Shown here in pieces: positions 68-63,268 of a stretch of DNA of 64,000 nucleotides. The DNA is taken from NCBI GenBank assembly GCA_965285935.1, contig OZ260661.1:135222001-135286000 (forward strand), written 5' to 3'. The notes beneath the pieces were generated by a model. It did not search any database and had not been told where the DNA came from. It worked only from the letters and a program-made list of their open reading frames with translations. Source of the DNA: Ophelia neglecta (taxonomy: Eukaryota). Each line of letters begins with the position of its first letter. Within the stretch, counting starts at the first letter, position 1. A program made the translations under genes and the position numbers.

Positions 68-3000
68 CTACAATCGATATATTAACTGACCCGTACTGCT
101 ACTAGTACTGGCATCTAAGCTAGAATCCATTTCAGTGTCATCATAACCAGCATTGACACCAGTATTATCCGGCGGAGTTATTGAACTGCTTGTATCTGGT
201 GCGCCAAACATTACATTATCTTTAACAGATTGAAACATATTTGTGTCAGGAATATCACCATCATCATCCTGGACATCCCTATGTATGTTTTGAGAAATGG
301 GATTTTGATGATTGCCATAGTTGTCAGATATTGTCGCATTATTCTGCGCTGGTGCTGACTTCATTTTATCCGGTGAGCGCAGAATAAAATTATCATTAAC
401 AGTGTGAGGCACATTCATGTCTGAAACACTACCTCCATCTTTCTGGGAGTTGCTTTCGAAATCATCTACTTTTTGTGATATGGCACTTAGTTCGTCCTCA
501 ACGCTGCTAGGGGGCGCTGCATTAGTATCCATTTGTCCAGACTTAATCATTTCTGGGGCGGGGTTTATTACGTTAATGTCAATATCATCATCCTCGTCAC
601 CATAGGTCACCCCCTGTAGAATCTCTTCCTCGTCGTTTGCGATGTCACCGTAAGATGTATCTTCTTTGGATGTTACTTGGTTTTCCAGATCACTAGACTT
701 ATCATGCTCTGTGTAATCGTAGAGGTCACTCACCGACTCAGTTTTCAAAAACAAACTGTTAATAATATAAAAAGTCGATAAACAGCATTATTCATATAAA
801 TGTTGAATGGGCTATGCCCAGTTATCATGTTAATGGTTGAACGTTTGTATATAGAACTTAGCTTTCGACAAAGAAGTTGTAAGAATCATATTAAATAGCC
901 TTACCTTCCCTTCCCTAACAAATAAAATACGATCACAGAAATCACGACAATCAGTACGAGGCCAATGGACACTCCAATGTAAACATATTTAATGGTCTCC
1001 GGATCAATAACTGTAACGTGAACAATAAGATAAAACCACATTAAAGAAAAAACTTCAAAAATAAATAATACAAATCATCAAATTATTGATTAAGAACCTT
1101 TACATGCAAGGTATTTATATAAATTAAATTTTAACCATCATTACCTACCAGTAGCATTTCTGTAAGTGATATCGGATGAGGCGGTCGAAAACGATGATAT
1201 AACAGTCACTTCTGCATCGGATGCTGCGACAGAGACTGTTGGCTTTGACGGATTAAAGATGCCTGATGCTGGCTGATTGTCGTCTGCTAAAAAATATGTG
1301 ATAACAACAGTAATTATAATGTGTTCATTGTGTACAAATTGGCACGTACGAGCATTTTTACTAGAGTATGGTTCTAATAATTAAGTACCTTTAAATTGAT
1401 TAACTCCTGTCTTTTCTCATTTGTTGTATTTCGAAATATTGTATCAAGCGGTAAATTGTTTATAGAACTCTCCCTTGAGGAGGAATAAAAGTATACATAA
1501 CTTTCATCGTGTAATGTGTGGTCGGTTTGATTTTCAGGGTAAACTCGTGTTATTTCATTTAAATTCGTGCGATGTCGGCTGATTCTGCGCATACTTCGGT
1601 TAAATCGGATTATGATACAGGCTTATTCCGTGTGAAATTACCCGAATTTAACCTCGCCCTTCATACTTACCAGTTCTTTCACAAATATATCTGTACGTCT
1701 CGTTGGGACTAGCGTCAATCCATTTCCCGATGTACATGCGGACATATCCAGTATAATTCATGGGGTAAGTTCCCAACCAGTTTTGCCAGCTGTACAATTC
1801 CCCGCTTAACCAGGTCCAGTCAGCTCGTCTCTGAGTTAAAGGATGAGGCCTATTTTGAAGTGGAAACGCCTTCCTTAATCCGATCCAAAAGTGGTTTTTA
1901 TTGTATTTCCATGCGCATGTCCCGCTCTGTTGGCAGTCATTACTGTATTTCAAACGTAATACATTACTTCTCGGTCATGGCACATATTGTTATCTAATAT
2001 TTTGAAAAGCATGAGTAGATAATATTTCGGCTCAGAGTGTACATTTTGAATAATTTCTGGAAAAAAGAGATTTATATTTGAATTATTTTTGTTTCCCCCG
2101 AAATGCAAAACAAATGTATTGAGTATCTTACACTTTGTTCACAAGCATTATTGTTTCCAAAGGACTAGTGACCGACACAAGTTTAGCCCCTAGTCTGATA
2201 CAGTCAACATCGGCTTCATTGTATGTTTTTATTTCGTTTTGTCCAGAAACGTGGTAGCAGTGTCCACCGAAATGAGACCAATTTCCCCTAAAACTGCATT
2301 GAGCAGCAACACCTACAATGAAAATGCGTGATATTGGATAATGCTACAGAGGATGGGCGTGGTTTTGATAAACAGGGATTGTGAATAATAAAACATCAGT
2401 TAAACGAACTTGGTCTGCTTAAACACTAGCCGCATACAGGACGCGATTTATAGGCGGACACACCCTACAAACACTGTGTTACCCGGCGTATATATTGTGA
2501 CCTTACATACCACAACGCGGTGTTATTTTCTCAACCTGAAAACGTTTTACCTAATAGTATTCTCGTTGTAAAACAGGTAAAATTAAGATAATACAGTGAA
2601 ACCTGTGTTTGTTGTCACCGATGTAATAAGGTCACCTGTCCACTTAGGTCACTAGATATAAGCACAATCCCCATGTATGCCTGTGTTAACTGACCTGCAT
2701 ATTAAGGTCACTTTCTAATGTGTTCAGTTTTTTCCAGTCCCTTGACTGTTCTGATTAGACAGGTTTCACTGTACATATCTAAGGCTGTTGATTAAACGCG
2801 GAGGTGCGGAGGCTATGCGGAGGCGGAGGTCATGAGGATTTCTGAGTGGCATGAATAATCGTCAGCAAGGAAAGGGTTAGGACGGAGGGTTAATTTAAGG
2901 GTTAGGGGAAGGGTTAGGGACAGGTTTGATAGGTCTAGTGCTCTGTTCTAATTTCGGGATTTACCTCTGCAAGGCTCCGCGCCTCCGCTTTTAATCAAAA

Positions 3001-3176
3001 GCCCATATCTAATGCCGAATTATACGTTTTGGTATAGTTGATATATATAATATAGTCTTACAAAACGACTAGAGTAAGAATAGTAACATATATCATGTAA
3101 GTATAATTATTTGTAATTGTATGTAATGGAACCTACCTGCTAAACACACCAATACTATAAACGGTATAAGCATCAT
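68..3176 (-). CDS. G0: divergent type I transmembrane C-type lectin-like receptor with long acidic Tyr-containing tail (~474 aa)
   Basis: Exons with GT-AG sites: 3137-3176 (MMLIPFIVLVCLA, signal), 2132-2312 (CSFRGNWSHFGGHCYHVS..C..LGAKLVSV), 1671-1942 (FWIGL..W.W..WQNW..WID..YICE), 1149-1286 (S/T stalk), 905-1010 (TM YVYIGVSIGLVLIVVISVIVFYLL), 68-755 (acidic tail). Phases 1,2,1,1,2; total 1425 nt, open. A possible GTCAGT donor near 85-90 means the 3' end could extend beyond the window. Confidence 0.85.
2594..2771. mobile_element. Tc1/mariner (pogo/Tigger-like) MITE in G0 intron 1
   Basis: 13-bp TIRs CAGTGAAACCTGT / ACAGGTTTCACTG flanked by TA on both sides. Confidence 0.85.
2783..3003. mobile_element. 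Non-autonomous DNA transposon (MITE) with 9-bp TSD, Mutator/Merlin-like
   Basis: Imperfect ~29-bp TIRs GGCTGTTGATTAAACGCGGAGGTGCGGAG / CTCCGCGCCTCCGCTTTTAATCAAAAGCC; direct repeat CATATCTAA at 2774-2782 and 3004-3012; internal GGGTTA-like units. Confidence 0.85.
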
Positions 3177-4366: not shown

Positions 4367-4739
4367 CTCCCAATGTTCACCAAGTCCACCTTCCATGAAT
4401 ATAAGAGAGAGTCCTTGGTGTGGAAGTTTAATAACCGTCACTATATGAACCACACGAAGCTATATAAATGTGCTACCCGTGGTGGGATGTGACCTCGGGA
4501 TCTACAATTGGTTTATGATATCTGTATCTAAAAGATTTTTTTCCTATTTAAACTTGCTTTCTTTATGTGACGGGTCTCTGCTGTAAGATGGACCATGAAA
4601 ATATCTTAAAGGTGATTTCAGTTCAAATCCAATACCGCGGTAAGGTCATATTCTACAGTACATTCCTTAGAATTAGTTTGCTAAAGAGAAAATAAATCAT
4701 TTAGACTGAATACCTTTTGCAGGGAGCATGGAAATGTGT

Positions 4740-8646: not shown

Positions 8647-11367
8647 TTAACTTGGAAGAGTCCTGGCGTATGTGCTATTTTCCACCACAGTCAAATCCTC
8701 GTCGTTTTCAAAACTAGATCTTTTTTTGCGTTTATCTCTCTTTTGTGGCTGTGCATATAAAGCTGCAACTCCAAGATTGTTAGGTGTATTGTAAGTCATC
8801 GTCGATTTTTTTGAGCTCTTATCAATTTCCGCGTACATTGGGCTAACTTCATCAGAATTAGCATTGTGTCCCGGGGGAAGCTGTGTGTCGTAGGAGTACT
8901 GGTTTGCGGCATTAGCTTGTGAGTTTGCATTCTTATTGCTTTTGGGTGTGCCACGATTGTTGAGGTCTTCCCTTATGTTGTCGTACCTATCATTAGTCTG
9001 TGTGGCCTTGGCCCTGCAGGAAAACAAAAAGTCATTTGATATCACATTAGCCAAACCCGTAAAACATGCAACTATATTACGAGAAGAGATAAGCACTATT
9101 TATATATATTTCAATATTTTCAAATGACACGTACAATTGCACCGTTGACATTGTATATCACTTTGTAATATCACAAGCCTCATTTATAAATTCATTCGCT
9201 TCTGCCAGTCTACTCAAGAAAGATATCTTACCTTCGTTTCAGACACAGAACAAATACCACAGCAATAACTATGATTGTGACACCACCCAACGCCGCTCCG
9301 ATATATATATAAATACTGGTACCTGGAAAAGTAATATTATGATAACATTAAACAATGTATGTTTTTCAGTTTTCTCGAAATATTGTTGGTTGGTGGCACG
9401 TGTCAATCTGACAGCGACCTGTCTCCGAGTATAACATTGATATTAAGGCTAATTTTCTGAAACATTCATAGTTTTCACCTTGATCACTGTTGTCAGAGAT
9501 GTCAGTGGTTGCCTTGGTTGTAAGTTTAGTTTGAGATGTTGGAGCTGATGTATTATTGTATCCTGGTATATTTTTGGTAGAGCCATTCCTTTGCATAGTT
9601 GTCATCGCTGTTGTCGTCGCCTTGTTAGAGACATTGCCTTGTTGGGGTCTTATACTGGATGATATCGAAGTTTCTGCATCTGAGCAAAATGACTTTGCAT
9701 GAACATGGATCGGATATATTAATTTGCGTTGATCAAATTACCAACCGCCAATTTTTTTTCAATGAGTTTGTCTTAACAAAGGGGGCACGTCCTATAATAG
9801 AACCTCAACGAACTACTGAAGATACATTGACTAGAATCAATTTCATTCGATTTACCTTTTTTTTCACATAGAAATCTATAATTTTTTCCTGGATCACCTG
9901 TCCCAGCCCATTTCCCGTCGATGCGCATCCTTGCATATCTCTCATTGACATTGGGTTCCCCGTCACCCCAATTTTGCCATTCATACCAAGCATCACCTAA
10001 CCATTCCCATCCATCTCGCCTCATTGTTTCGTTGTAGATGTTTGTTGAGCTTGAAACGTCCTTTGTTAATCCAATCCAGAATTGGTGCATTCTATCCTCG
10101 GAATCGCAAACCTCCCCCGACATACACTTTATCCTGGTTAAAATGTAAGAATAGGTCATAGCACATAGCCAATACAATAATGCTATAATATAGTAAATCC
10201 GTAAACAATTGAAAAACACACCACCCACCACATTATAGGTATTATTGAGAAAATGTAATGTTAGAATGACAGTACTAGGAAACAAATAGCATAACATTCG
10301 TTTCATTTCAATACTGTAAACATTAAAATTACAAGAATCTGTCTTACAGGTTTTCGACGACGAATTCGTTTTGTTCCTTGTTTTCCACTGATACTAGATT
10401 GGCATGCAATCCTTCACATCTGCTAACCGCTTCTGTGAAATTCCGCAGAATGTCCTTTCCTGAGACATAATAACATCTTCCATCATACGGAAACCACTCG
10501 CCGTCAAATACACATTGATTTGCTACAACTGTAACACAGTAAACATAGCGGGTCATACTCGGGTAATAAACTACCGGGAAGAAATGTTTGAGAGGGCGGG
10601 CATCTTAAGAAATAAATGCTTAGCTTGAAAGAAACAGGAATCACTTATGACTAACACTATAAATAATGCAATGGAGCTATCACATTTTTGTATCAGAATA
10701 AATTATAGGCCCAACAAAAGCAACCCTTCTTCCCCCAGGTACTTTCCCCGTTGTCTTCTGACCGATCAAATACAATAATGTTCGATGTATAAACGTGTAG
10801 TTAGCCAAATTAGGTACGATGCCATGTTTTCAATTAAGCCGCTTGGGGTGTTGTCCTTGGGTTCTTTTTATGAATTTCAAGCCTGTTTTTAGGGTCTTAG
10901 AATATAGCATGGCCATTTCCGACGGAACCAATGACTTTCGGATTATAGGCGTTTTAAGCATCATGAAGTTCCATCTAAAATGCCATTTAACCTGACGAGA
11001 GCTATCCACGTTTGAAGAAGGAACACATTTGGCTCATGAGCCCAAGAGTACTATTCGAACAATCACTGAATCCGTGAGCCTTGGAAATATACATAAACAT
11101 AACCCACTTCACCGCATTTACTATTATCATTTTTACTTATATTCGTAGCCACAAAACAAACTTTACCCGAATACGCACACGCCTTCGACTCCCTTCTTAG
11201 TTCTTCTTTAATTGTAATAGTGAACCAACACGCTAGCTATGAAAATGGAAATATTTGTATGTTCACATTGTATTGAGAACACCGAGGTGTCTCAATATGT
11301 GTATACACATACCTGTACACAATGTGACTGCCACTAAAACACCAAGAAACAGGTCGGTAGGATACAT
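8647..11367 (-). CDS. G1: type I transmembrane C-type lectin-like receptor, tail type A (~390 aa)
   Basis: Exons 11313-11367 (MYPTDLFLGVLVAVTLCT), 10348-10528, 9856-10133 (FWIGL..EPN..FLCE), 9479-9679 (Thr-rich stalk), 9232-9322 (TM IYIYIGAALGGVTIIVIAVVFVLCL), 8647-9013 (tail with YDNI, YSY, YAEI, YNTP, YAQP, ENSTY). All GT-AG, 1173 nt, open. Confidence 0.9.
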
Positions 11368-11389
11368 ATTGGGCCGAGATTGGGATATC

Positions 11390-12608: not shown

Positions 12609-13023
12609 TTATTTTGTAGCTATAAGCAGTGAATTATTGCATGATATATTCAGTTTGCCCTCTCGTACTTCCGTATATGGACCATCAGTCTGCCACCCGA
12701 AGTCTCGTATATCCTCGTATGGACCATCAGTCTGCCACCCGAAGTCTCGTATATCCTTGTAGGGACCATCAGTCTGTAAACCCGAAGTCTCGTATATCCT
12801 CGTATGGACAATCAGTCTGCCACCCGAAGTCTCGTTTATCCTCGTATGGACCATCAGTCCGCGGCCCAGCTTTTCGTTTGCCTTCGCTAGGAGTGTTTAT
12901 ATGGTCAGCTGGTGGCTGAAGGTGGCCTACATACTCATACACAGTAGCAATATATGCTTCATGTCTTGAATATGCTGCTTTGTAATATCCATGACCAGTG
13001 GGGGCGGGGGTGTTCGATCGTTC
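12609..13023 (-). pseudogene. Orphan, 5'-truncated paralog of the Tyr-rich tail exon (frameshifted copy)
   Basis: ERSNTPAPTGHGYY..YEYVGHLQP..DGPYED repeats, homologous to G2-G7 tail; 1-bp insertion in the 43-bp unit 12763-12805; 5' end fused to LINE. Confidence 0.8.
12679..12859. repeat. 42-bp minisatellite, 4 units plus partial
   Basis: Unit GGACCATCAGTCTGCCACCCGAAGTCTCGTATATCCTCGTAT starting at 12679, 12721, 12763, 12806, partial at 12848. Confidence 0.95.
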
Positions 13024-14760
13024 TCGCCAAAGGAACAGAGACGGTTTTCTCGCGGAAGTCTAGCCCACCTGACAGTCTCCAGTAGCAACGAATGCGAGCC
13101 TGTACGCATCCTGGTGACCGCGACGCGAGCAATATTTAGGATACGCGTTTTGATGAGGAATCAGACATCACACGGTTGCGGATCAGGTTATATAATCAGT
13201 CTGTGTATCAAGAGTCTGAAAGTACATGTCTGACTTGGCCACGCGTGCAGCCTGAAGTGTCAAACATAACGGGGAATCGCGAAAATTGACCCGCTATGAA
13301 ACTTTCCCCGAAAAGAGAGCCTGCTTTTCCCGAACAATAGCATCCACATCAAAAACTCCCACCTCCACGAGCACAGAGTGCGTGGTGGTCTGTAGGCGTA
13401 CGCACATTATAGCCTTGAACGTTTCGATATATGCCTGTTTCAGGCAGGCCACTGAGGAAGTCCACCAACTCTCACATCCATAGAGTATGGCAGAAAAGAG
13501 TGCACACTGCCACACGCTCCTTGATGGCATAAGGAGCGTCTCTGTGTGTATTGAGAAAACACAGTAGTCGAGCACATGTCCCTGTTTGGTCGCTATACGA
13601 TCCTGTACCTGTGGAGAGATCCCGCGAATAGAGATCAAGTTGCCAAGATAGCTGTACTGCTCTGTTCGTTCCATGGCCCTCCCAGCAACAACAAACGGAC
13701 GACAGTCACGTGAATTTGATACCATAAACAATGACTTTTTATGGTTGATCCGTAATCCATCGCGTCCCACAAAGTCGCCACCAAAGATCTTCCGTTTACG
13801 CCTCAACGCAGCGCGTGAAGTGGCTAGTTTGGCCGTGTCGTCCACCAGTAGGTGAGCGTGAAGCCAGGCTAGCCAGCCATCATCTGGGAGGGATCGAGGG
13901 ACAACCGCAAGAGGATTGATGAAGAATACAAACAGGATGACAGACAGTGGAGCCCCCTGACGAAGCGCGAGAGTCGCATGAATGGTCGTGTTCCCAATGA
14001 GACTAGCCGTATTTGAAAGTAATGCACACAGTGCCGCCAAGAAACGACCACCACAGCCTTTCACAGCCAGCCAATTTAGTATTATTTGTCTTTTTACGGT
14101 GTCATATGCATTTTCAAAGTCATTAAATGCTATGTACAATGTTTCCTTTGTTCTCCGAGCACGGTCGATAATGAGACGTAAAGTGAGCAGTTGTTTAGGA
14201 CATTCTCGGCCAGGCTGGCCGCCAGCCTGTTCCTGGCAAGAACCCCACCAGCGAGGGAATCGACCTATTAAATAGAGGAGTACACCTCGGCAAGAGAGGG
14301 GATTTCACTGATACCCCGATAGTTCCCAGGAAGATATCGGTCCCCCTTTTTGAATAACATAGTCAACCTCGCCACTAACCATGCGTACATGGTTTTCCCC
14401 CACCAAATCAGATATCATGTTTTATAAGACACCGAATTTGTTGCCATCCGGTATTGACTAGACAGCTGTCAACTCCTCCCTCAATGCCAGAAAGGTACGA
14501 GTCTAGTGTCTTGAATCACTGTGTGCAGGGCCCGCTTCAAGTCATCGGCCCTGGGCTTAGTAATAGCTGACCGTGTCAATGTAAATGTGAATATCTCAGC
14601 TAAGTCCACGTTGACAGTTGGTCTGCCAGACCCAGACTGTCTCATTATGAAATATTCACAGGTGATCGAGTGTACAGGGATAAGGGACCATGGACGCCAG
14701 TCAAGCGTAAAATACAAGCAAACCCAATCAAATATGTCCAAAATTAATCCAGTTCCCAGA
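13024..14760 (-). mobile_element. Decayed, internally deleted non-LTR retrotransposon (LINE; CR1/L2/RTE-X-like), copy a
   Basis: RT motifs FNDFENAYD, LRQGAPLS..LF, LVDD, YSYLG; C-terminal SHSLLLETVRW..PRENRLC; stops and frameshifts; 5' limit approximate. Confidence 0.85.
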
Positions 14761-43100: not shown

Positions 43101-43950
43101 CACACGGCCTTGCTACAACTGTAACATAGTAAACACAAAAATCGGGAAATAAACTACCAGGAAGAAATTCACGAAAGCGTGGGCATCCTTAGAACTAAAT
43201 AATACGCATTGAGACAACAGGAATCTTTGATGACTACCACTATCATTAATACAGCACAGCTATCAAATTATAGTATCAGAATATATTACATGCCAAACAA
43301 AAGGAACCTGTCTTCCGCCAGCTAATTTTGCCTTTTGTTTACAACCAATAAAGTGAAAGTATATTCTATATGTGTAGTAAGCCGATTTACGTACGAAGCC
43401 ATGCATCAATTATATCCAACTGGGGTCCATCATTTGGGTTTTTTGTGAATTAGAACTATTTTAGAGGGTCTGAGAACATAACATGGCAGTTTCCGACGGT
43501 ACCAATGACTTTCGGATCATAGGCATTCTAAGTGTTATGAAGTGCCATCTAAATGGACATTCAACCCAAATGAGAACTATCCAGTAATTTGAGGAAGAAT
43601 CAGGAACACATTTAGGTGATGAGCTCAAGAATACTCAATGAATGAAACTGTGAGCCATGGCTGTTTACATAACACCACTCACTTATACGTATTCACGTAT
43701 TGTCTATTAGTATACTTACTTATATTGGTACCCACAAAAATCAAACTTTGTCTGAAAACGCCCAAGCCTTCATTGGTTAACTCCCCTCTAATTTCTAACC
43801 GAGTTTTATAAGTGAACCAAACTGAGAATGAAAGTATATGTGTTTTCGCCTAGAATAAAGGGCACCGAAGTGTCTCCATATGTATATACACATACCTATA
43901 TATAGCGTGAATGTCGCTAAAACACCACAGAACAGGGCGGCAGGATACAT
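40199..43950 (-). CDS. G5: type I transmembrane C-type lectin-like receptor, tail type B (~408 aa)
   Basis: Exons 43896-43950 (MYPAALFCGVLATFTLYI), 42938-43118, 42449-42726 (AAG acceptor), 42093-42272, 41343-41436, 40199-40637; 1227 nt, open. Confidence 0.88.
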
Positions 43951-47665: not shown

Positions 47666-50600
47666 TTAATTAGTCCGTGATACATTCAGTGGAGTGTATG
47701 TGACATTCGGTGAGAGGGCCTCGTATTCTCTTTCAGTTACTTTTTCCACAGAAGCCCCAACAGTCTGCCGCCCGACTTCTCCGATGTCTTCATATGTATC
47801 TTGAGTCGGCCGCCCAACTTCTTGTATGTCCTCATATGGACCATCAGTCTGCCGTCCGATTTCTTGTATATCCTCGTATGGACCATCTACACATGGACTG
47901 CTTAAAGGATCGGCTCGTGGCTGAATGTAGCCTACTTCCTCATACTGAGAAGTAATATATTGCCCTGGTCTCGAATTTTCTACGTTGTAATAATCATGAC
48001 CAGTGGGGGTGGGCGTGTTCGATCGTTCGTCCTCGTGAACTGCTGCTTCATTATAATAGGTGTGTTCTGTGTAGGTCGTCTGTTTGTCTGCTATGTGTTG
48101 CTTCCTTAAAAATACATTTATCGATACTTATTACTATGCATATATACATTTGAAATCTCATATGATACTTTAGTGTTCAGTTCGGTCTTTCATAATTATA
48201 ACAACTACATAAACAAAAATCAATATAACCCCGACTGCTGATCCGATGTATAACTATATAATGGTATCACCGGCATCACAAATTATATCAATATCAGCTC
48301 ATTGTCTATATTTGCATTTTGCATTTAACCTTCAGGATTATCATAGCAGCTCATCTTCCATTTTGTACATCTTCCTGCACGCAGTCTCTTTCCGGATCAT
48401 CCCCTCCGCCCAACTTTCTCACCGCGACCTACCCCCTTCCAACACATATTTCCTGCCCCGCCACCTGTCTACTCGCCGTGGACGTGGCAGTTTGCAGCTC
48501 CCCGTCAGTCTCTTTCACCCGGCGCCATTTTCCATCCATGGAGTAAGTTTCAGTAATTGGCTTTCTCTTTACCTGGCCAGCCTGCTTGTCAAGCGTTTTG
48601 CCAATCCATTTCCTTCCCGCACCCAACACCTACCATCTTCCCCCAGCATTCTGACTCGACCCATTAGTCATCAGGCCGGGCATGCTGACAACATCCAGGC
48701 ACCGGGATCTCCCTCCGGTCACATCATACCACCCCAACCCACATCTACACACACTCCTCCCCCTCACACTCAAACTCGCAACACACACCGATGACTGCAG
48801 CCGACTAGAAATCCGAAACCAGCTGCCGCCTCCCCCACATTGCAACCTAGTGCTACGGCCCAGTCGGGCTTCGATGAAGGCATGGCATCATCGAATCCCA
48901 TTTCATCCCACTTCTCATTATGAATGGGTTAGGATGGGGTTATCAGATGCTAAGTTGGCATCAAGCGATCATAGTCATCTTAACGACGGAGAAGACTGTC
49001 ATGGTAGAGTGTATTATGTCTTCAGAGAGAGAACAAGTAAAAAACTATTTCTTATGCTTCTGTCACCGGGGTATAGCTGAATCCGGTTACGGTTGTTAAC
49101 CATCCAAAATGGCATCCTCCAGCAAAGGTCAGAAATATTTCGATCCGGGATTTTATTTGCTGAAAATAAACTTTTAAAATATGCGAATGTGTTAACTAAT
49201 AAAAGGATCGACCTGCTTGTATGCTCTAGACATTAAAACCGCAAATGAGTCAGTCGTGTGTAAAAAGGTAATTCACTTTTATAGTTTGGGTAACTGACTA
49301 AAGATGGGCGGTAACTTATTATTAATATGGGCTTAATAAAAAGGGATGGAGTATAAGAGCACACATTAACTTGTCGTGTGAAAGGCGAGAAGGAAGTTGT
49401 GCAATTGAGCGCTTAAACTACTTTTATTTTAAATGAAATAAAAAACATACATATTAACATGGTTTGACATTAATCTAAAGGCTAACACATCTTTATTCTA
49501 CAATAAAAATTAAATCCAATTATAATAGAAAAAGAGAGACGCCAATTTAAATGTAATTAAAGGGTTGATACTCGGTAAATTAGAATATAATGCGCCTGAT
49601 AGAAGAGCAAGTTAGACATCGACTGGGCGGGACACATTTGATAGTGAAACATTGACATCGAATCACCGCTGACCTGAACTCAGTACCGCTCAGAAACTCA
49701 AAAGATGCGAGGCAGAGGGCTGCGATCACTGTCAAAGCCATTAATAACAACTAAGGAACACCTTCGCATCTTTAAACTAGTTTATTCTGTGTATATGAGA
49801 AAGGTACAGAATACGCTGACCTTAGCTGGTAGATGGGATTTTGTATGTGGAAACTGCTACCCCACCCACTTATCCCCCAGTGTCGGTACGAATTAGCAGA
49901 TAACATGCGAGATAATTTTCTAAATAATGTTTTCATGCTCTCGGGGATTGCTGTTGCCCCCTCAAATGTGATAAAAAGCACTCGGCAACTATCCACCTTT
50001 TCCATTTTATAATAATATATTCAAAAGAGTAAAGCTTAAAATATATGACAAGACAAGATACCCAGCAAGCTTTAGCCATAGCATACCAATGATTTAACCA
50101 TGCAAGGTACAATTTAACAATCAACATGTTTGGCATCTTACTAACGCTTCTCATAAGTACTTATCTTACCTTCGTTTCTGGCAGGCAACATACAGAACAA
50201 CAGCAATAAAGAGGATTATCACACCACCCAGCAAAGGTCCGATATATAAATGTATACTGGTACCTGGAAAAGTTATATAATATAATGTAAGACAACGTAT
50301 CTTTGTTCTATTTTAAAAGAAATATTATTGGTGTGGTCGGTCTTGAAAATGTTAGGCAATATGTGAGGTAAATGTACGGTATGAGATCGTGTGTGTTTTT
50401 TCCAGGGCTTTAGCACCATGGACTTTTTCAAGGCTTTTTTCCAAACCGAAACCATAAGTATTGGGATATGCAGCTGCCTACTTATAATTTGGCATACAAC
50501 CACCTCTGCCATAGGCTTACAATCACAATGTGTCAACTTTCAGTTGTGAACCCTGTAAAGAAAACTGTAAAGAGAGGGAGGTCTCCAGACCTTCCTGCAG

Positions 50601-53600
50601 CTACCGGCATGGATTCATGTGAAATTCCCATGGAGATCTACGTGTCAGTGAGCTACAAACTTATTCTGCGAAGTAAAATTATTGATCTGAGGAGTGTAAT
50701 TGCTGACCTGAAAACCTCTGCAATTCCTAAGAACATATGAAGAACTTTTGAATAGTGTCAATCAAAATTGGTCGGAAATGCCGGATTCAGGGATAAGCAG
50801 AGAGAACATGCTGATCAGATAAAGGAGTTAGAGGGTCTCAATGGAAACTTGCAGTCAAAAGTAATTGAAGTCAAACAATATTCTAGGATAAACAATATCG
50901 GAATTCCTTCAAATGTTATTAAAACAAGGTTAGATGCTGTTAGCTGAAGCACTTGCTCCATCTTTGTAAAGAAACATTTCATGGATCACTACTCACGTGC
51001 TTGCACAATACCAGACCATTATATGTTTCGGGTCTCTGCCTCGAGTTCTTTTTTCCTAATGTCCTACCTAATGATGTGTATATTTCTGTCATGTATGCTT
51101 TGTCTTACACGATTAAGTATATTACATAATTCTAATTTTCCACCTAATTTAAGCAAAATATTTCAAAAGTATTTACTTGGTCTCTTTTCTTTACAATCAT
51201 GTTAAGTTTGCCCAATAATGTCATCGTCCATTTTCATTATTTTTGCTTTGTGTCGTTCGAATGTTCCTGTCAGAGCTTCACTCCTTTTTTTGATGTGTTT
51301 TCTTATGTATTTGGGACTGTTGTTCATGTGTTTTACTGCCAAGACGATAGTAATGTCATGGTTCTTTCACACAATTGTTTTTGTTTTTGTTTTACTGCCT
51401 GTGATGTCTCTGCCGTAGGTATCTTATAATTATCATTTCATTTTGGAAGTGTTGCGTTGAATATATTATTTGTATTAAGTTCAATTGTTTGCCTTGCCAA
51501 AATTTAACTTATACGGTTGGCTCATTGTGAGTATCCTTCGACTGAACATCATTTTGTCATGGTTTGCTCGGGTGCGCGAGGCGTCTGTTCGCTGCTGTCT
51601 ATGTATTAAAGTGGTTGTGCATTAATGGTGGCGAACCTACATCTCGCGTACCTGTGGTTATATGTGTGGTAATATGTAACCTTTGAAAGTAGTTTATTGT
51701 CCTAAATAAATCTGAGTCTGTACGTGACACGTGTTTCCAAATTTACAAAGACCTGTCTCCATTAATTTTCAGAAACATTTATAGTTTTTACCTTGATCAC
51801 TGTTGTCAGAGATGCCAGTGTAGTGGTTGCCTTGATTGTTAGTTTAGTTTGAGATGTTGGAGTTGATGTGTTATTGTATCCTGGTATAGTTTTGGTAGAG
51901 CCATTACTAGTAGTCATCGCTGCTGTCGACGCCTTGTGAGAGACATTACCTTGTTGAGGTATTTACTGAATGGTATCGAAGCATCTGCATCTGAGTAAAA
52001 TGATTTTGCATGAATAGTTTCTAACCGCCAAAATTTGTTATTACAACATCTTTTGTCTCAGCAAAGCTGAAGATACACTGACTGGAATGTAATATCCCAG
52101 TGAGTGAGAGCATAACATCAGACAATGTATGTGTTTCAGTTTTCTTGAAATATTATTTGTTGTTGGCACGTGTCAAACTGACAGCGACCTGTCTCTGTAT
52201 ATAAAATTAATATAAAGGCTTATTTTCTGAAACATTTATAATTTTCACCTTGTTCACTGCCATCGGAGGTTTCAGTGGTTGCCTTGGTTGTTAGTTTAGT
52301 TTGAGAGGTTGTAATTGACGTTTTGGTAGAGCCATTCCTTTGTATAGTTGTCATTGCTGTTGTCGTCGCCTTGTTAGAGACATTACCTTGTTGGGGTCTT
52401 ATACTGGTTGATGTCGAAGCCTCTGCATCTGAGCAAAATGATTTTGCATGAACAAGGATCGGATATATTGATTTGTATTGTTCAAATTATCAACCGCCAA
52501 AATCATTTCAATCAGTTTGTCTCAGCAAAGGGGGCACGTCCTACAATTGAAACTCAACTTTATACTGTATTTACACTGACTTGAATCTAATTTCAGTCGA
52601 TTTACCTTTTCTTTCACATAGAAATCCATAATTTTTTCCTGGATCATCTGTCCCAGCCCATTTCCCGTCGATGAGCATCCTTGCATATCCCTCATTGCCG
52701 TCGGGTTCCTCGTCACGCCAATTTTGCCATTCATACCAAGAACCACCTAACCACTCCCATCCAATTCGCCTCATTGTTTCGTTGTAGCTGTTTGCTGAGC
52801 TTGAAACGTCCTTTTTTAATCCAATCCAAAATTGATGCATTCTATCTTTGGAATCGCAAACCGCCCCCGACATACACTTTATCCTGCTGAATAGGTAAAA
52901 ATAAGTCATATCACATAGCTAATACAATAATACAATAATATAGTAAATCTCCAAACAATTAAAAAACACACCACCCACCACATGATAGGTAATATTGAGA
53001 AAATGTATTAGTAAGATAACAGTACTAGGGCACACATAGCATGACATTCGTTTCATTTCAATGCTGTTAGCATTAAAATACAAGAATCTTTCTTACAGGT
53101 TTTCGAAGACGAATTCGTTTTGTTCCTTGTTTTCTAATGATACTAGAGAGGCATCCAACCGTTCACAACTACTAACCGCTTCTGTGAAATTTCGTAGAAC
53201 TATCTTTCCTGAGACATAATAACACCTCCCATCATAAGGATACCACTGGCCCTCAAAATCACACCGCCTTGCTACAACTGTAACATAGTAAACACAAAAA
53301 TCGGGAAATAAACTACCGGGAAGAAATTCACGAAAGCGTGGGCATCCTTTGAACTATATAATAGGCATTGAGACAACAGGAATCTTTGATGACTGCCACT
53401 ATCATTAAAACAGTACAGCTATCATATTATTGTATCAGAATATATTACATGCCAAGCAAAAGCAACCCTTCTTACACAAGGTACTTTCACCGTTTGCTAA
53501 CAACCGATTAAGTGAAATAATATTCGAAATGTATACGTGTAGTAAGCCGATTTAAGTACGAAGCCATATTTCAATTATATTCAACTGGGGTCCATCATTT

Positions 53601-54108
53601 GGGTTTTTTTTTGTGAATTAGAACTATTTAAGAGGGTCTGAGAACATAACATGGCCATTTCCGACAGTACCAATGACTCTCGGATCATTGGCATTCTTAG
53701 TGTTATGAAGTGCCATCTAAATGGACATTCAACCCAAATGAGAACTATCCATGTTTGAGGGATAAACAGGTACACATTTAGCTGATGAGCTCAAGAATAC
53801 TCAATGAATGAAACTGTGTGCCATGGCTGTATACATAACACCACTCACTTACACGTATTCACGTATGGTCTATTAGTATACTTACTTATATTGGTACCAA
53901 CACAAAAAAAACTTTGTCTGAATACGCCCAAGCTTTCATTGGTTAACTCCCCTCTAATTTCTTACTGAGTTGTATTATTGAACCAAACTGAGAATTTGTG
54001 TCTTCGCCTAGAATAAAGGGCACCAAAGTGTCTCCATATGTATATTCACATACCTATATATAGCGTAAATGTCGCTAAAACACCAAGGATCAGGGCTGCA
54101 GGATACAT
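47666..54108 (-). CDS. G6: type I transmembrane C-type lectin-like receptor, tail type B, EPD motif (~408 aa if the decayed second stalk exon is skipped)
   Basis: Exons 54054-54108, 53097-53277, 52606-52883, 52249-52428, 50170-50263, 47666-48104 (AAG acceptor; hand translation open, absent from the ORF track). Confidence 0.82.
51792..51990 (-). pseudogene. Duplicated, frameshifted stalk exon inside G6 with intact splice sites
   Basis: 199 nt (195-nt type, -1 and +5); CAG acceptor and GTAAAA donor retained; inclusion reads DADASIPFSKYLNKVMSLTRRRQQR-stop. Confidence 0.8.
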
Positions 54109-55843: not shown

Positions 55844-55846
55844 TTA

Positions 55847-59776: not shown

Positions 59777-62700
59777 TTAATTAGTTCGGGATATATTCAG
59801 TGGAGTGTATGTGACATTCGGTGAGAGGGCCTCGTATTCTCTTTCAGTTACTTTTTCCACAGAAGCCCCAACAGTCTGCCGCCCGCCTTCTCCTATGTCT
59901 TCATATGGACCTTTAGTCGGCCTCCCCACTTCTTGTATGTCCTCATATGGACCATCAGTCTGCCGTCCGATTTCTTGTATATCCTCGTATGGACCATCTA
60001 CACATGGACTGTTTAAAGTATCGGCTCGTGGCTGAATGTAGCCTACTTCCTCATATTGAACAGTAATATATTGTCCTTGTCTTGAATTTTCTACGTTGTA
60101 ATAATCATGACTATTGGGGGCGGGGGTGCTCGATCGTACGTCCTCGTGAGCTGCTGCTTCATTGTAATAGGTGTGTTCTGTGTAGGTCTTCTGTTTGTCT
60201 GCTATCTGTTGCTTCCTAAAAATACATTTATTGGTACTTATTATTATGCATATACAAATTTGAAATCGCATATGATACTTTGGTGTTCAGTTCAGTTTTT
60301 CACAATTATCACAACTACACAAACAAAAATCAATATAACCCCGATGGCTTATCGGATGTTAATGCATTTAATGGATTCACCGACGTCACAAATACTATTA
60401 CTATCAGCTCATTGTCAATTTGCATTTTACATTTAGCCTTCAGGATTATCGTAGCAGCTCTTCTTTCTTTATTCTTTATTCGCTTTGCCCATCCCTCATC
60501 TTCCCGCACAACACACCCACCCTCTCCCCCAGCATTCTGATTCGACCCCTTGTTTATCAGGCCGGGCATACTGACCACTCCCAGGTACCGGGATACTGTT
60601 GCCCCCTCAAATGTGATAAAAAGCACTCAGGCCATGTTTTCCATTTTAATTAAAATATACTCAAAACGGTAAAGCATAAAATATATAACAAGAATAGATA
60701 CCCGGAAAGCTTAAGCAATGGTTTACCAACGATTTAACGATGAAAGGCCCATTTGACAGTCAACATATTTGGCAACTCACTAGCTAAGATTACTAATCCG
60801 CTTCTCATAAGAACATATCTTACCTACGTCTCTTGCAGACAACATACAGAACAACAGCAATAAAGAGGATTATCACACTACCCAGCACTGGTCCGATATA
60901 TAAATAAATACTGGTACCTGGAAAAGTTATAAAATGATACTATTAGACAAAGTATCTTTGTTCTAGTTTCCACGAAATATTATTGGTCTGGTCAAGGTGA
61001 AAACCAAACACTCGGGCCTCTTTGAAGGCTGCCGAAGTTGAACTTAACCTCTTCCATATGTGGAATGAATGTAGGGCGTGCTTGTATAATTAAGGCTAAG
61101 CTTTCTCAGCAATACAAACAGCAGATGAACATCTGAGCCACATACCTACTCTGAGGAGTGTAGTTTCTGACTTTAAAACCTTTGCAATTCCTTAGCGAAC
61201 ATATGAAGAACATTTAACTGTCAATCAAAATATGTCGGACAATGGTGGATTGAGGGGTAAGCAAAGTAAACAGGCTGATCAGATAAAGGAGTTGGAGGGT
61301 CTCTGAGGAAACTAGCAGTCAAAGGTGCTGGAGCAGGAACAATACTTTAGGATAAACAATTTTGAAATTCCGAATATTAAAGATGCGATGTTAAACGAAG
61401 CTACTCTAAAAGATCTTCAATTTGTAGAGAATCATAAACCCAAAGAATAGAATTTTACTTTACATTCAAAAAATCTGTTTTCAATTCGTGTTTCCAAATT
61501 TACAACGACCTGTCTTCATATGCTGCACTCACATTTAGGTGAATTTTCTGATATATATATAGTTTTTACCTTGATCACTGTTGTCAGATATGTCTGTGTT
61601 TGCCTTGGTTGTTAGTTTAGTTTGAGATGTTGGAATTGATGTTTTGGTTGATCCATTTCTTTGTATTGTTGTCATCGCTGTTGTCGTCGCCTTGTTAGAG
61701 ACATTACCTTGTTGGGGTCTGATACTGGTTGATATCGAAACTTCCACATCTAAGTAAAATGATTTTGCATGAACATGGATCGGATATATTAATTTGTATT
61801 GTTCAAATTACCAACCGCTAAAATTTGCTATTTCAATGAAGCTCAGCAAAGGGTGCACGTCCTACAATTGAACCTCAACTTATAACTGAAGATACACTGA
61901 CTGGAATCTAATTCAGTCGATTTACCTTTTCTTTCACATAAAAATCTATAATTTTTTCCTGGATCATCTGTCCCGGCCCATTTCCTGTCGATGCCCAACA
62001 TTGCATATCCCTCATTCACATTGGGTTCCCCGTCACCCCAATTTTGCCAATCATACCACGCACCACCAAACCACTCCCATCCATCTCGCCTCATTGTTAC
62101 GTTGTCGCTGTTTGCTGAGTTTGAAACGTCCTTTGTTAATCCAATCCAGAATTGGTTCCTTTCCTTCACGGGATCGCAATCCTGCCCCAACATGCACTTT
62201 GTCCTGGTTTAAAGGTAACAATAAGTCATACTACTTAACTGGTATAATACTAAAATAATGAAAGAACTTCTGTAAGCATTAAAATACAACAATCTTTCTT
62301 ACAGCTTTTCGAAAACGAATTCGTTTTGTTCCTTGGTTTCTAATGATACTAGAGAGGCATGCATAGCTTCACATCTGCTAGCCGCTTCTGTGAAATTTCG
62401 TAGAACCATCTTTCCTGAGACATAATAACACCTCTCATAATAAGGATACCACTGGCCCTCAAATGCACATAGCTTTGCTACAGCTGTAACACAGTAAACA
62501 TAGCGGGTCATACTCGGGTAATAAACTACCGGGAAGAAATGTATAAGAGCGCGAGCATCTTAAGAAATAAATGCTAAGCATTGAGACAAACAGGAATCTT
62601 TGATTACTAACACTATCATTGGTACAGTACAGCTATCATATTATAGTATCAGAATATATTACATGCCAAACAAAAGGAACCCGTCTTCCGCCAGCTACTG

Positions 62701-63268
62701 TCGCCTTTTGCTTACAACCGATCAAGTGAAAGTATATTTGATATGTGTAGTAAGCCGATTTACGTACGAAGCCATGCATCAATTATATCCAACTGGGGTC
62801 CATCATTTGGGTTTTTGTGAATTAGAACTATTTTAGAGGGTGTGAGAACATAACATGGCCATTTCCGACGGTACCAATGACTTTCGGATCATAGGCATTC
62901 TAAGTGTCATGAAGTGCCATCTAAATGGACATTCAACCCACTCAGGAACACATTTAGCTGATGAGCTCAAGAATACTCAATGAATGAAACTGTGAGCCAT
63001 GGCTGTATACATAACACCACGCACTTATACGTATTCACGTATGGTCTATTAGTATACTTACTTATATTGGTACCCACAAAAAAACGCCCAAGCATTCATT
63101 GATTAACTCCCCTCTAATTTCTTACTGAGTTGTATTATTGAACCAAACTGAGAATTTGTATCTTCGCCTAGAATAAAGGGCACCGAAGTGTCTTCATATG
63201 TATATTCACATACCTATATATAGCGTGAATGTCGCTAAAACACCACGGAACAGGGCGGCAGGATACAT
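59777..63268 (-). CDS. G7: type I transmembrane C-type lectin-like receptor, tail type B (~408 aa)
   Basis: Exons 63214-63268 (MYPAALFRGVLATFTLYI), 62303-62483, 61926-62203, 61570-61749, 60824-60917, 59777-60215; GT-AG, 1227 nt, open; intron 2 shortened to 99 bp. Confidence 0.9.

What the first reader, a model, noticed from the sequence alone, without database searches (positions are those of the whole stretch)
68..63268. Tandem cluster of eight type I C-type-lectin receptors with phosphotyrosine-motif tails: candidate invertebrate immunoreceptor complex
Seen: eight co-oriented six-exon genes (signal / CTLD-a / CTLD-b / mucin-like stalk / TM / Tyr-rich tail) with identical intron phases and open spliced frames despite heavily decayed spacers. 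Established: vertebrate NK-complex and Dectin-cluster lectin receptors signal through ITIM/hemITAM motifs but are type II proteins; ITAM-Syk/Shark and ITIM-SHP signalling also exist in invertebrates (e.g. Draper). Inference: this is an independently built type I counterpart, a birth-and-death family of recognition receptors (pathogen, allo- or gamete recognition). I recognise no named gene with this architecture, but cannot search to confirm novelty.
Basis: partly seen in the sequence, partly recalled or inferred. Interest (0 to 1): 0.92.

Follow-up and report, generated by a model that had tools for sequence, protein, structure and literature searches.

The report
Tandem lectin-receptor genes with tyrosine tails
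This stretch of an invertebrate chromosome holds a recently multiplied family of intact genes for cell-surface receptors with a sugar-binding-type (C-type lectin) head and a tyrosine-rich inner tail; they are very likely real recognition-and-signalling receptors, but similar receptors are already known from oysters and nothing here shows where or when they are used.

Summary
[quoted passage not shown] All use GT-AG introns in phases 1,2,1,1,2, and all are open (390-474 aa). The array runs past the window: 11 intact copies share one tail exon that occurs nowhere else in the 762-Mb genome.

The spacers are not heavily decayed; whole 7-10 kb units are 80-97% identical. Coding constraint is nevertheless strong: 381 substitution events and no stop codon (about 23 expected), and three indels, all in multiples of three (about 38 frameshifts expected). 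dN/dS is 0.89 in the CTLD and 0.41 in the tail.

The tail has no homologue among 1.84 billion proteins. Its ITAM-like pattern comes entirely from a 14-residue tandem repeat, and the ITIM matches are only marginally above chance. A membrane-proximal YxN is shared with diverged paralogues. The genome encodes a Shark-type kinase.

No RNA data were available, so an immune role is inference. The closest named relative by architecture is oyster CgCLec-HTM, so the "no named gene" claim fails. Verdict: new variant of a known kind.

The parts
59777..63268 (-). G1, intact 408-aa gene. Exons E1-E6: 63268-63214, 62483-62303, 62203-61926, 61749-61570, 60917-60824, 60215-59777.
   Evidence: All introns GT-AG and the frame is open. 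99-100% identical to copy U3, which lies outside the window.
47666..54108 (-). G2, intact 408-aa gene. Exons: 54108-54054, 53277-53097, 52883-52606, 52428-52249, 50263-50170, 48104-47666. Introns 4 and 5 are enlarged (1985 and 2065 nt). The EPN motif is changed to EPD.
51792..51990 (-). A second, dead copy of the stalk exon inside intron 4 of G2. It is 199 nt (not a multiple of 3) and has stops in all frames.
   Evidence: (model G2b breaks the frame).
40199..43950 (-). G3, intact 408-aa gene. Exons: 43950-43896, 43118-42938, 42726-42449, 42272-42093, 41436-41343, 40637-40199.
35702..36112 (-). T1, a partial copy of the tail exon. It is a 149-aa open frame that lacks the 5' part and the acceptor. 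Its 42-nt unit (a 14-residue repeat containing PYEDI) is expanded to 4.4 copies at 98% identity. It lies just 3' of a reverse-transcriptase remnant.
   Evidence: No acceptor compatible with phase 2, so it is read as a relic.
30443..34257 (-). G4, intact 413-aa gene. Exons: 34257-34203, 33407-33227, 33016-32739, 32563-32369, 31712-31619, 30881-30443. It is a twin of G5 (97% over 9.3 kb), except for E1 and the 5' half of E2.
23497..26850 (-). G5, the reference model, 413 aa. E1 signal 26850-26796; E2 CTLD-a 26463-26283; E3 CTLD-b 26070-25793; E4 stalk 25617-25423; E5 TM 24766-24673; E6 tail 23935-23497.
   Evidence: splice sites read from the DNA; Pfam; PDB; hydropathy, NxS/T sites, motifs.
23600..23718 (-). 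A 42-nt tandem repeat (2.8 copies, 81% match) inside the tail exon. It encodes three YEDI motifs spaced 14 residues apart. The same repeat is present in all 11 common tails.
16507..19910 (-). G6, intact 413-aa gene. Exons: 19910-19856, 19523-19343, 19122-18845, 18671-18477, 17820-17727, 16945-16507. It is a mosaic: E1 is 100% identical to G5, the CTLD is closest to U2, and the tail is closest to U1.
12675..13023 (-). T2, a decayed partial copy of the tail exon with the frame broken. It sits in the same RT-plus-tail block as T1 (12271-14371 aligns to 35331-37390 at 92%).
8647..11367 (-). G7, intact 390-aa gene. Its E1-E5 belong to the main family (11367-11313, 10528-10348, 10133-9856, 9679-9479, 9322-9232), but its tail exon is different (9013-8647). 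That tail has 7 Tyr (YDNI, YAEI, YNTP, YAQP) and no ITAM or ITIM consensus.
   Evidence: The tail is single-copy in the genome. Its C-terminal 35 aa are 43% identical to the tail of the flanking paralogue G9.
68..3176 (-). G8, a diverged paralogue of 474 aa with the same six-exon plan and intron phases. Exons: 3176-3137, 2312-2132, 1942-1671, 1286-1149, 1010-905, 755-68. The tail is 229 aa and very acidic (47 D+E) with 7 Tyr. The CTLD has no EPN motif.
   Evidence: Lectin_C on both CTLD exons; tail single-copy.
13294..14139 (-). Reverse-transcriptase remnant (Pfam RVT_1). It is one of the retroelement fragments carried in every intergenic spacer of the repeat unit; others lie near 21074-22225, 28014-29171, 36350-37866, 44796-45707 and 56116-56999.

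Best explanation
This is a lineage-specific tandem array of functional protein-coding genes. In the stretch I held there are 13 with this exon plan, and 11 share one tail.

Each gene encodes a type I membrane receptor with these parts: a cleavable signal peptide; one long-form C-type lectin-like domain; a heavily glycosylated Ser/Thr/Pro stalk; one transmembrane helix with a basic stop-transfer; and an acidic cytoplasmic tail of about 145 residues that is probably disordered and carries 13 tyrosines.

Proposed mechanism. The variable CTLD binds an external ligand, possibly a glycan, since EPN is kept in most copies although the WND half of the calcium site is not. Clustering then lets a Src-type kinase phosphorylate the tail, which acts as a multi-site docking platform for SH2 proteins. 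The triple YEDI repeat (Yxx[I]-x10-Yxx[I]) could dock a tandem-SH2 Shark/Syk kinase. YYN could dock Grb2/Drk. YEEV could dock Src-family SH2 domains. The invariant C-terminal VTYxPL could dock an SHP-type phosphatase. In this the tail would work much as the 13-tyrosine tail of Draper does.

The family grows by unequal crossing-over, and copies exchange segments. The ectodomain changes fast while the tail is conserved.

What is shown: gene structure, intactness, constraint, domain identity, motif presence, and a Shark-type gene in the genome. What is inferred: topology, glycosylation, phosphorylation, the SH2 partners, the ligand, and any immune role.

Confidence by layer: real constrained coding genes for type I CTLD membrane proteins, about 0.9; the tail works as a phosphotyrosine docking platform, about 0.5-0.6; an immune or non-self recognition role, about 0.35. 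The overall figure given is for the statement as a whole.
For: - Gene models are intact, with canonical splice sites, in 13 of 13 copies.
- No stops and no frameshifts, against 23 and 38 expected.
- Substitution density is lower in coding sequence than in introns (0.31 against 0.49 events per column).
- dN/dS is 0.41 in the tail and 0.89 in the CTLD. The N:S contrast between them is significant (p=3.5e-5).
- The Lectin_C profile is split collinearly over exons 2 and 3, and PDB CTLD hits support both halves.
- Hydropathy shows an N-terminal hydrophobic segment plus a single TM. The ectodomain has 3-8 NxS/T sites, and the stalk is 37-45% S+T+P.
- All 11 common tails keep two extended-ITAM matches, one to three ITIM-consensus matches (two in nine of the eleven), two YxN and three or four YE[ED][IV].
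- 142 of 143 Tyr cells are conserved.
- A membrane-proximal YxN recurs in four of five otherwise unalignable tail types.
- The genome has an intact 685-aa SH2-Ank-SH2-Tyr-kinase gene and arrays of SH2 plus phosphatase exons.
- Draper precedent: ITAM defined as YxxI/L-x6-12-YxxI/L, plus other functional Tyr, binding Shark (PMC6219719).
- Oyster precedent: CgCLec-HTM and CgCLec-TM1 signal through Syk (PMC13027682).
Against: - No RNA run holds the locus, so neither transcription nor splicing has been seen.
- The ITAM-like spacing (x10) lies outside the canonical x6-8 and is a by-product of a tandem repeat. With the repeat collapsed, motif enrichment is marginal (P 0.04-0.05).
- Tyr columns are not significantly more conserved than the rest of the tail (P=0.07).
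- The WND motif and the C2-C3 disulfide of classical sugar-binding CTLDs are absent, so glycan binding is uncertain.
- A CTLD dN/dS near 1 also fits relaxed constraint.
- Gene conversion between copies could keep some unused copies open.
- G7 and G8 lack ITAM and ITIM patterns.
- The spliced protein could not be sent to signal-peptide, TM or fold predictors.
Confidence: 0.55

Rival explanations
1. These are endocytic, scavenger or adhesion receptors. In this reading the tail tyrosines are mainly YxxPhi sorting signals (YEDI, YEAL, YTPL, YYNV, YEEV) read by clathrin adaptors, next to acidic clusters. The proteins would take up glycosylated material or mediate adhesion, as the vertebrate type I CTLD proteins DEC-205, mannose receptor, CD302 and layilin do, rather than act as SH2-coupled immunoreceptors.
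For: - The proteins have type I topology with a single CTLD and a mucin stalk.
- The best PDB hit of CTLD-a is a CTLD of DEC-205 (Lymphocyte antigen 75).
- Most Tyr motifs fit YxxPhi as well as they fit SH2 consensus sequences.
- Motif enrichment over chance is weak.
- That these vertebrate receptors are endocytic is from my own knowledge.
Against: - Thirteen tyrosines, a tripled YEDI unit, and YxN and YxxP motifs are more than sorting needs.
- A membrane-proximal YxN conserved across diverged tails fits the Grb2-type specificity known from the literature better than AP-2 binding.
- The two functions are not exclusive.
Confidence: 0.22
2. The array is a young segmental amplification with little individual function. 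One or a few copies are used, and the rest are redundant or silent duplicates kept open by their youth and by gene conversion. On this view the array says little about a receptor 'system'.
For: - Units are 80-97% identical, spacers included.
- G4/G5 and G1/U3 are near-identical twins.
- The mosaic pattern shows that sequence is exchanged between copies.
- CTLD dN/dS is 0.89.
- No RNA evidence exists.
- Each unit carries retroelement debris.
Against: - At the divergence seen in introns, about 23-37 stops and about 38 frameshifts are expected across the 11 copies, and none is seen.
- Every splice site of 13 genes is canonical.
- Tail dN/dS is 0.41.
- Truly dead pieces (T2, the extra stalk exon) do show stops and frameshifts, so decay is visible where constraint is absent.
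Confidence: 0.1
3. The genes are self/non-self (allorecognition) or gamete-recognition receptors rather than pathogen receptors. The fast-evolving CTLD would recognise polymorphic ligands of the same species, and the tail would integrate activating and inhibitory signals.
For: - The ectodomain evolves faster than the tail.
- ITAM-like and ITIM-like motifs sit in the same tail.
- The array lies inside a region of about 2.3 Mb rich in related CTLD genes on one chromosome.
- Invertebrate allorecognition receptors with ITAM/ITIM tails are documented in other phyla, for example Botryllus (PMC12582321, abstract only).
Against: - There are no polymorphism data; the only DNA runs come from a single sample and are short unitigs.
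- There are no expression data.
- Variation between paralogues is not allelic diversity.
Confidence: 0.1

Closest known systems
Oyster CgCLec-HTM (and CgCLec-TM1), transmembrane C-type lectins of Crassostrea gigas
   Same: Both are lophotrochozoan, with a single extracellular CTLD/CRD, the TM placed C-terminal to it (type I layout) and a tyrosine-motif cytoplasmic tail. The oyster proteins bind LPS and bacteria, recruit Syk through its SH2 domain, and activate ERK-Rel or ERK-GSK3beta to drive IL-17/TNF (PMC13027682, PMC12842671). This is the mechanism I propose here.
   Different: The oyster proteins are described as single genes with one non-classical ITAM (hemITAM). Here there is a tandem array of 11 or more genes whose tail carries 13 Tyr, a tripled YEDI unit, YYN boxes and a C-terminal ITIM-like motif, plus a mucin stalk. 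The tail has no detectable homologue anywhere.
Vertebrate NK-complex / Dectin-1 cluster C-type lectin-like receptors
   Same: Both are clustered, duplicating single-CTLD receptors whose tails carry ITIM, hemITAM or ITAM-type tyrosines read by SHP and Syk. Both have a long-form CTLD with the extra N-terminal disulfide. PDB hits to CTLD-a include NKG2A, CD94, CD69, CD72 and DC-SIGN.
   Different: The vertebrate receptors are type II, with an N-terminal tail, and most activating members signal through charged-TM adaptors. Here the topology is type I, the TM has no charged residue, and all motifs sit in the receptor's own long tail. There is no orthology, so the resemblance is analogy.
Draper / CED-1 / MEGF10 engulfment receptors (tail only)
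   Same: Draper is a type I receptor whose tail has 13 tyrosines, including an extended ITAM (YxxI/L-x6-12-YxxI/L). Src42A phosphorylates the ITAM and Shark binds it, and the non-ITAM tyrosines also matter (PMC6219719). The common tail here also has 13 Tyr and extended-ITAM spacing, and the genome has a Shark-type kinase.
   Different: Draper's ectodomain is EMI/EGF repeats, not a CTLD. It has an NPxY motif, which is absent here. There is no sequence similarity between the tails.
Vertebrate type I single-CTLD proteins (layilin, CD302, chondrolectin; own knowledge)
   Same: The overall layout is the same: signal peptide, one CTLD, TM and a cytoplasmic tail with tyrosine-based motifs.
   Different: They are single-copy, conserved genes with short tails used for talin binding or endocytosis. 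They do not form a diversifying tandem array, and no homology was detected here.

Membership tests
C-type lectin-like domain superfamily (Pfam PF00059 Lectin_C) | A match to the domain profile over its whole length. | tested here: met
   Exon 2 matches profile positions 3-31 (19.3 bits) and exon 3 matches 37-107 (17.4 bits). The two are collinear and adjacent. Each alone is under the 22.6-bit cut-off, but their simple sum is 36.7 bits. G8 gives the same pattern. PDB phmmer hits are to CTLD N-halves and C-halves respectively. The joined domain was not searched.
C-type lectin-like domain superfamily | The conserved framework: WIGL motif, C1-C4 and C2-C3 disulfides, plus C0-C0' in long-form domains. 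| tested here: inconclusive
   FWIGL is invariant, and cysteines are present at the positions expected for C0, C0', C1 and C4. The C2 and C3 positions carry no Cys (Y-A-R-M and T-D-D-P). A family-specific pair, C-x5/6-C, sits before WIGL. The disulfide assignment is made by eye against the MBP-type pattern (own knowledge); there is no fold model.
Calcium-dependent carbohydrate-binding C-type lectins (true CRDs) | EPN or QPD plus WND residues forming calcium site 2. | tested here: not met
   EPN is present in 9 of the 11 common-tail copies and in G7. It is EPD in G2, EPT in U5 and absent in G8. WND is replaced by W-[AY]-G-T-D-D in all copies. Sugar binding is therefore possible but not implied.
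ITAM-bearing immunoreceptors | Two Yxx[L/I] motifs at the canonical spacing of 6-8 residues. | tested here: not met
   The YEDI motifs are separated by 10 residues. YEAL and YTPL are separated by 5.
ITAM-bearing immunoreceptors (extended definition, as used for Draper) | YxxI/L-x6-12-YxxI/L. | tested here: met
   There are two overlapping matches in each of the 11 common tails; the definition is from PMC6219719. The pattern is produced wholly by the 42-nt tandem repeat. In shuffles, P=0.002 with the repeat and no match once it is collapsed. G7 and G8 have none.
ITAM-bearing immunoreceptors | Phosphorylation by a Src-family kinase and binding of a tandem-SH2 Syk/ZAP70/Shark kinase. | not testable with these tools
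   Only the presence of a candidate reader was shown: a 685-aa ORF with SH2-Ank-SH2-kinase architecture at C8:29348741-29350795.
ITIM-bearing inhibitory receptors | The [S/I/V/L]xYxx[I/V/L] consensus in the cytoplasmic tail. | tested here: met
   S-Q-Y-E-E-V and V-T-Y-[TN]-P-L are each present in 10-11 of the 11 tails. Chance expectation is 0.35-0.38 matches per tail, P about 0.04-0.05, so the support is weak.
ITIM-bearing inhibitory receptors | Recruitment of an SHP-type (SH2-SH2-PTP) phosphatase. | not testable with these tools
   SH2 and Y_phosphatase exon hits alternate in about 11 tandem units at C2:96.40-96.67 Mb. No gene models were built for them.
NK-complex / Dectin-cluster CTLRs (groups II and V) | Type II orientation, with an N-terminal cytoplasmic tail and a signal-anchor. 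| tested here: not met
   There is an N-terminal hydrophobic signal-like exon. The TM follows the CTLD and stalk and is itself followed by K/R-rich residues. The tail is C-terminal.
Oyster CgCLec-HTM-type receptors | A single CTLD, a C-terminal TM and a tyrosine (hemITAM) tail. | tested here: met
   The architecture is as. An acidic E-R-E-Y-E-A-L is invariant in the tail. The oyster architecture is taken from PMC12842671 and PMC13027682.
Oyster CgCLec-HTM-type receptors | Sequence homology to the oyster proteins. | not tested
The tail has no homologue among 1.84e9 representatives. A word-based search with CTLD-b found nothing in the 97-310 aa length range.

The most novel reading that the evidence does not exclude
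The array may be the core of a chromosome-scale 'lectin receptor complex' in a lophotrochozoan. All 61 or more related CTLD exons lie on one chromosome, most of them within 133.2-135.5 Mb. Its receptors would carry activating (Shark-binding tandem YEDI) and inhibitory (SHP-binding VTYxPL) motifs in the same orphan tail. They would be read by a lineage-expanded set of SH2 phosphatases and kinases. Together this would be an independently evolved NK-complex-like recognition system (immune or allorecognition), built in type I orientation.
Probability: 0.2. Interest if true: 0.75.

Novelty: new variant of a known kind. Interest (0 to 1): 0.45.

Why it matters
If these genes are expressed and signal as proposed, they would give annelid-like invertebrates a diversifying, germline-encoded family of lectin receptors with built-in phosphotyrosine signalling. 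That would extend the single-gene oyster precedent (CgCLec-HTM) to a whole gene complex. It would also offer a tractable case of convergent evolution with the vertebrate NK and Dectin clusters.

The tail is short, has no detectable relatives and is rich in motifs, which makes it a convenient substrate for testing which SH2 readers (Shark, SHP-like, Grb2/Drk) existed and were reused outside vertebrates.

Without expression or binding data, it is at present a well-supported gene family of unproven function.

Tried and rejected
- **RNA evidence.** Laying them on 26000-31999 gave only short unitigs (150-560 bp) at 97-100% identity. None spans a repeat unit, so they neither confirm the G4/G5 duplication independently nor show alleles.
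- **Tail homologues.** phmmer against 1.84e9 representatives gave 7 hits. All are bacterial repeat proteins (SdrD_B/SpaA, BNR and similar) matched through repetitive composition, and I rejected them.
- **ESM Atlas.** The best feature score was 0.89, to a mollusc 'hypothetical protein' cluster. This is below the level that means anything.
- **CTLD-b search.** I queried through a 177-aa open frame, scored on residues 59-150. Nothing was found in the 97-310 aa range. That is no evidence against longer relatives.
- **T1 as an alternative last exon.** Rejected: no acceptor gives the Tyr frame in phase 2.
- **Tyr conservation as proof of function.** Not significant (P=0.07).
- **ITAM as an independent signal.** It disappears when the repeat is collapsed.
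- **Joined protein.** Pfam, PDB, genome and homology searches were all done exon by exon, by reference. No signal-peptide, TM or 3-D prediction of the whole protein or the whole CTLD was therefore made.
- **Complex prediction.** No job was sent, because phosphotyrosine-dependent binding cannot be modelled there.

Full report
**What is there.** The window is G000:C1:135222001-135286000. All the genes lie on the minus strand. I read splice sites directly from the DNA of one copy, G5. I then mapped them onto the other copies through alignments of each exon with its flanks. This gave eight complete models in the window:

| Gene | Span | Length |
|---|---|---|
| G1 | 63268-59777 | 408 aa |
| G2 | 54108-47666 | 408 aa |
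| G3 | 43950-40199 | 408 aa |
| G4 | 34257-30443 | 413 aa |
| G5 | 26850-23497 | 413 aa |
| G6 | 19910-16507 | 413 aa |
| G7 | 11367-8647 | 390 aa |
| G8 | 3176-68 | 474 aa |

Each gene has six exons:
- a 40-55-nt signal exon;
- two exons that together make one C-type lectin-like domain;
- a Ser/Thr/Pro-rich stalk exon (37-45% S+T+P);
- a transmembrane exon ending in K/R-rich residues;
- one long tail exon.

Every intron is GT-AG, the phases are 1,2,1,1,2 in all eight genes, and no model has an internal stop.

**Domain identity.** I searched exon by exon. Pfam Lectin_C matches exon 2 at profile positions 3-31 and exon 3 at positions 37-107. Each match is just under the gathering score (19.3 and 17.4 bits against 22.6), but the two are collinear, and G8 gives the same pattern. 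Against PDB sequences, exon 2 hits the N-terminal halves of CTLDs (DEC-205, NKG2A, CD72, DC-SIGN, CD94, CD69). Exon 3 hits the C-terminal halves (REG4, lithostathine, SP-A, CD23, MBP-C).

The domain has FWIGL and cysteines at the positions expected for the long-form N-terminal pair and for C1 and C4. It lacks the C2-C3 pair and has a family-specific C-x5/6-C before WIGL. EPN is kept in most copies (EPD in G2, EPT in U5, absent in G8), but WND is replaced by W-[AY]-G-T-D-D. It is therefore a CTLD, but it does not pass the test for a classical calcium-dependent sugar-binding CRD.

Hydropathy shows an N-terminal hydrophobic segment and a single TM. The ectodomain has 3-8 NxS/T sites. Type I topology follows from the signal-like exon, the cysteine-rich ectodomain and the basic residues after the TM.

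**The array is bigger than the window.** The common tail exon occurs 11 times in the 762-Mb genome, all within C1:135.238-135.324 Mb and all on the minus strand, plus two fragments. I fetched the flanks and built five more intact six-exon models, U1-U5, at window coordinates 68084-105376. In U1 the stop is lost and the protein runs on for 7 residues.

Further out lie diverged paralogues with the same layout and the same phase-2 tail intron: G9 (about -10.3 to -12.6 kb) and U6 (about 115.6 to 113.1 kb). A plus-strand gene nearby joins a related CTLD to other domains. Relatives of the CTLD-b exon number at least 61, all on contig C1. Most lie at 133.2-135.5 Mb, and a second array lies at 144.67-144.83 Mb. 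The tails of G7 and G8 are single-copy in the genome.

The spacers are not heavily decayed. A self-comparison shows whole 7-10 kb units, with their introns, intergenic DNA and a reverse-transcriptase remnant, aligning at 80-97%. G4/G5 are 97% identical over 9.3 kb, and G1/U3 are 99-100% identical. Mean pairwise intron divergence is 0.11-0.18, and synonymous divergence is 0.08-0.23.

**Is the open frame more than chance?** Yes. Across the 11 common-tail genes:
- At least 381 substitution events hit 1245 coding columns without making one stop. Expected are 22.9 at the observed number of events, or 36.6 at the intron rate (P about 1e-10 and 1e-16).
- The only coding indels are 3, 6 and 21 nt. The introns carry 103 small indels, 74% of them not multiples of three, so about 38 frameshifts are expected in the coding sequence (P about 5e-17).
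- Substitution density is 0.31 events per column in coding sequence and 0.49 in introns.

Dead pieces do decay. T2 (13023-12675) has a broken frame, and the extra stalk exon in intron 4 of G2 (51990-51792) has stops in every frame. One caveat is that copies exchange segments. The nearest relative changes along a gene; for example, G6 has the first exon of G5, a CTLD closest to U2 and a tail closest to U1. Conversion could therefore rescue some copies. The family thus evolves by tandem duplication with mosaic exchange, plus some loss.

**Pattern of constraint.** Pairwise dN/dS by region:

| Region | dN/dS |
|---|---|
| signal | 0.71 |
| CTLD | 0.89 |
| stalk | 0.60 |
| TM | 0.63 |
| tail | 0.41 |

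Nonsynonymous:synonymous events are 140:28 in the CTLD against 52:36 in the tail (Fisher p=3.5e-5). The framework residues of the CTLD are invariant while many surface positions take 3-5 states. This fits diversifying recognition with a conserved signalling end. It also fits partial relaxation, and I could not run site models.

**The tail.** The common tail (145 aa) has 13 Tyr, 24-27 Asp+Glu and 12-14 Lys+Arg. It matches no Pfam family. It has no homologue among 1.84 billion representative proteins; the seven weak hits are bacterial repeat proteins.

Its motifs are T-Y-Y-N-E and D-Y-Y-N-V (YxN), Q-Y-E-E-V, G-Y-I-[QH]-P (YxxP), three YEDI motifs 14 residues apart, E-Y-E-A-L, and a C-terminal V-T-Y-[TN]-P-L. 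Of the 143 Tyr cells, 142 are conserved.

Every common tail has two matches to the extended ITAM pattern used for Draper (YxxI/L-x6-12-YxxI/L; PMC6219719). It also has one to three matches to the ITIM consensus, two in nine of the eleven.

The statistics are sobering:
- The ITAM-like pattern is made entirely by a 42-nt tandem repeat (2.8 copies).
- With the repeat collapsed, Yxx[LI] and ITIM counts exceed shuffles only at P about 0.05 and 0.04.
- Tyr columns are not significantly more conserved than other tail columns (P=0.07).

A more persuasive sign is that a membrane-proximal YxN (YYNE, YYNT, YYNT, YDNI) recurs in four of five tail types that are otherwise barely alignable. The C-terminal 35 residues of the G7 tail are 43% identical to those of G9. 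From established SH2 specificities (own knowledge):
- pYxN is the Grb2/Drk motif;
- pYxxP is the Crk/Nck type;
- pYEE[IV] is the Src-family type;
- paired Yxx[LI] is the Syk/Shark type.

**Readers in the genome.** A single 685-aa ORF at C8:29348741-29350795 has the Shark architecture, SH2-ankyrin-SH2-tyrosine kinase. A p85-type PI3K subunit is also present. At C2:96.40-96.67 Mb, SH2 exon hits and phosphatase exon hits alternate in about 11 tandem units on one strand. This suggests an expanded set of SHP-like genes, but I built no gene models for them.

**Comparison with the known.** The literature has one: oyster CgCLec-HTM. [quoted passage not shown] Its non-classical ITAM binds the SH2 domain of Syk and drives ERK-Rel, IL-17 and TNF. 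CgCLec-TM1 signals through Syk-ERK-GSK3beta (PMC13027682).

Vertebrate NK-complex and Dectin-cluster receptors resemble the array in clustering and motif logic, but they are type II. Draper offers the closest parallel for the tail: type I, 13 Tyr, an extended ITAM, Src42A and Shark (PMC6219719). My searches of the paper library found no tandem family of type I CTLD receptors with such tails described in annelids or molluscs. That is not proof of absence.

**Verdict.** The gene family is real and under coding constraint (about 0.9). A phosphotyrosine docking function of the tail is plausible (about 0.5-0.6). An immune or other non-self recognition role is an untested inference (about 0.35). No RNA data could be reached.

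Earlier notes of this scan call the genome annelid-like and list another CTLD receptor cluster 1.5 Mb away. I did not test the taxonomy. One search agrees that related CTLD genes are spread over that region.

I rate this a new variant of a known kind, of moderate interest.

Noticed in passing
G000:C2:96400000-96670000 (outside the window): About 11 tandem units on the plus strand. In each, two SH2 exon hits are followed by Y_phosphatase exon hits (for example SH2 at 96490121 and 96498258, then PTP at 96501001 and 96504069). This looks like an expanded array of SHP-like SH2-SH2-phosphatase genes, the classical ITIM readers.
   Followed up: partly
G000:C8:29348741-29350795, minus (L027:3741-5795): A single intron-less 685-aa ORF with SH2, ankyrin repeats, SH2 and a tyrosine kinase domain, which is the Shark (Syk-family) architecture.
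   Followed up: yes
G000:C1:133.2-135.5 Mb and 144.67-144.83 Mb: All 61 genome hits to the CTLD-b exon lie on this one contig. About 18 of them form a plus-strand array at 144.67-144.83 Mb. This looks like a chromosome-scale concentration of one CTLD subfamily.
   Followed up: partly
window 35702-36112 and 12675-13023, minus: Partial tail-exon copies sit immediately 3' of reverse-transcriptase remnants, inside a shared 2.1-kb block (12271-14371 aligns to 35331-37390 at 92%). In T1 the 42-nt YEDI unit has expanded to 4.4 nearly identical copies, so it behaves like a minisatellite.
   Followed up: partly
window 25583 region (stalk exon of G5) and the same site in other copies: The stalk exon holds an internal C-A-A-G|G-T-A-A-T-G site in phase 1, conserved in most copies (G-C in G6 and G7). 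If it were used as a donor, it would give a nearly stalk-less isoform that still splices in frame to the TM exon. There are no RNA data to test this.
   Followed up: no
ext region, window coordinates about -18700 to -15900, plus strand (L023): A related CTLD (two exons, with EPD) on the opposite strand is followed by ORFs that look like a different extracellular module. The same CTLD subfamily therefore seems to be used in another architecture.
   Followed up: no
window 55128-55753, plus: A Pro/Arg/Ser-rich 136-aa ORF and a following 72-aa ORF sit in the G1-G2 spacer next to retroelement debris. They are probably part of a transposable element.
   Followed up: no
G000:C12:55.49-55.53 Mb and C5:3.28-3.61 Mb: Further clusters of SH2-domain hits. 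Several on C12 lie in long open frames of 370-1442 aa. Together they suggest lineage-specific growth of phosphotyrosine-reading proteins.
   Followed up: no
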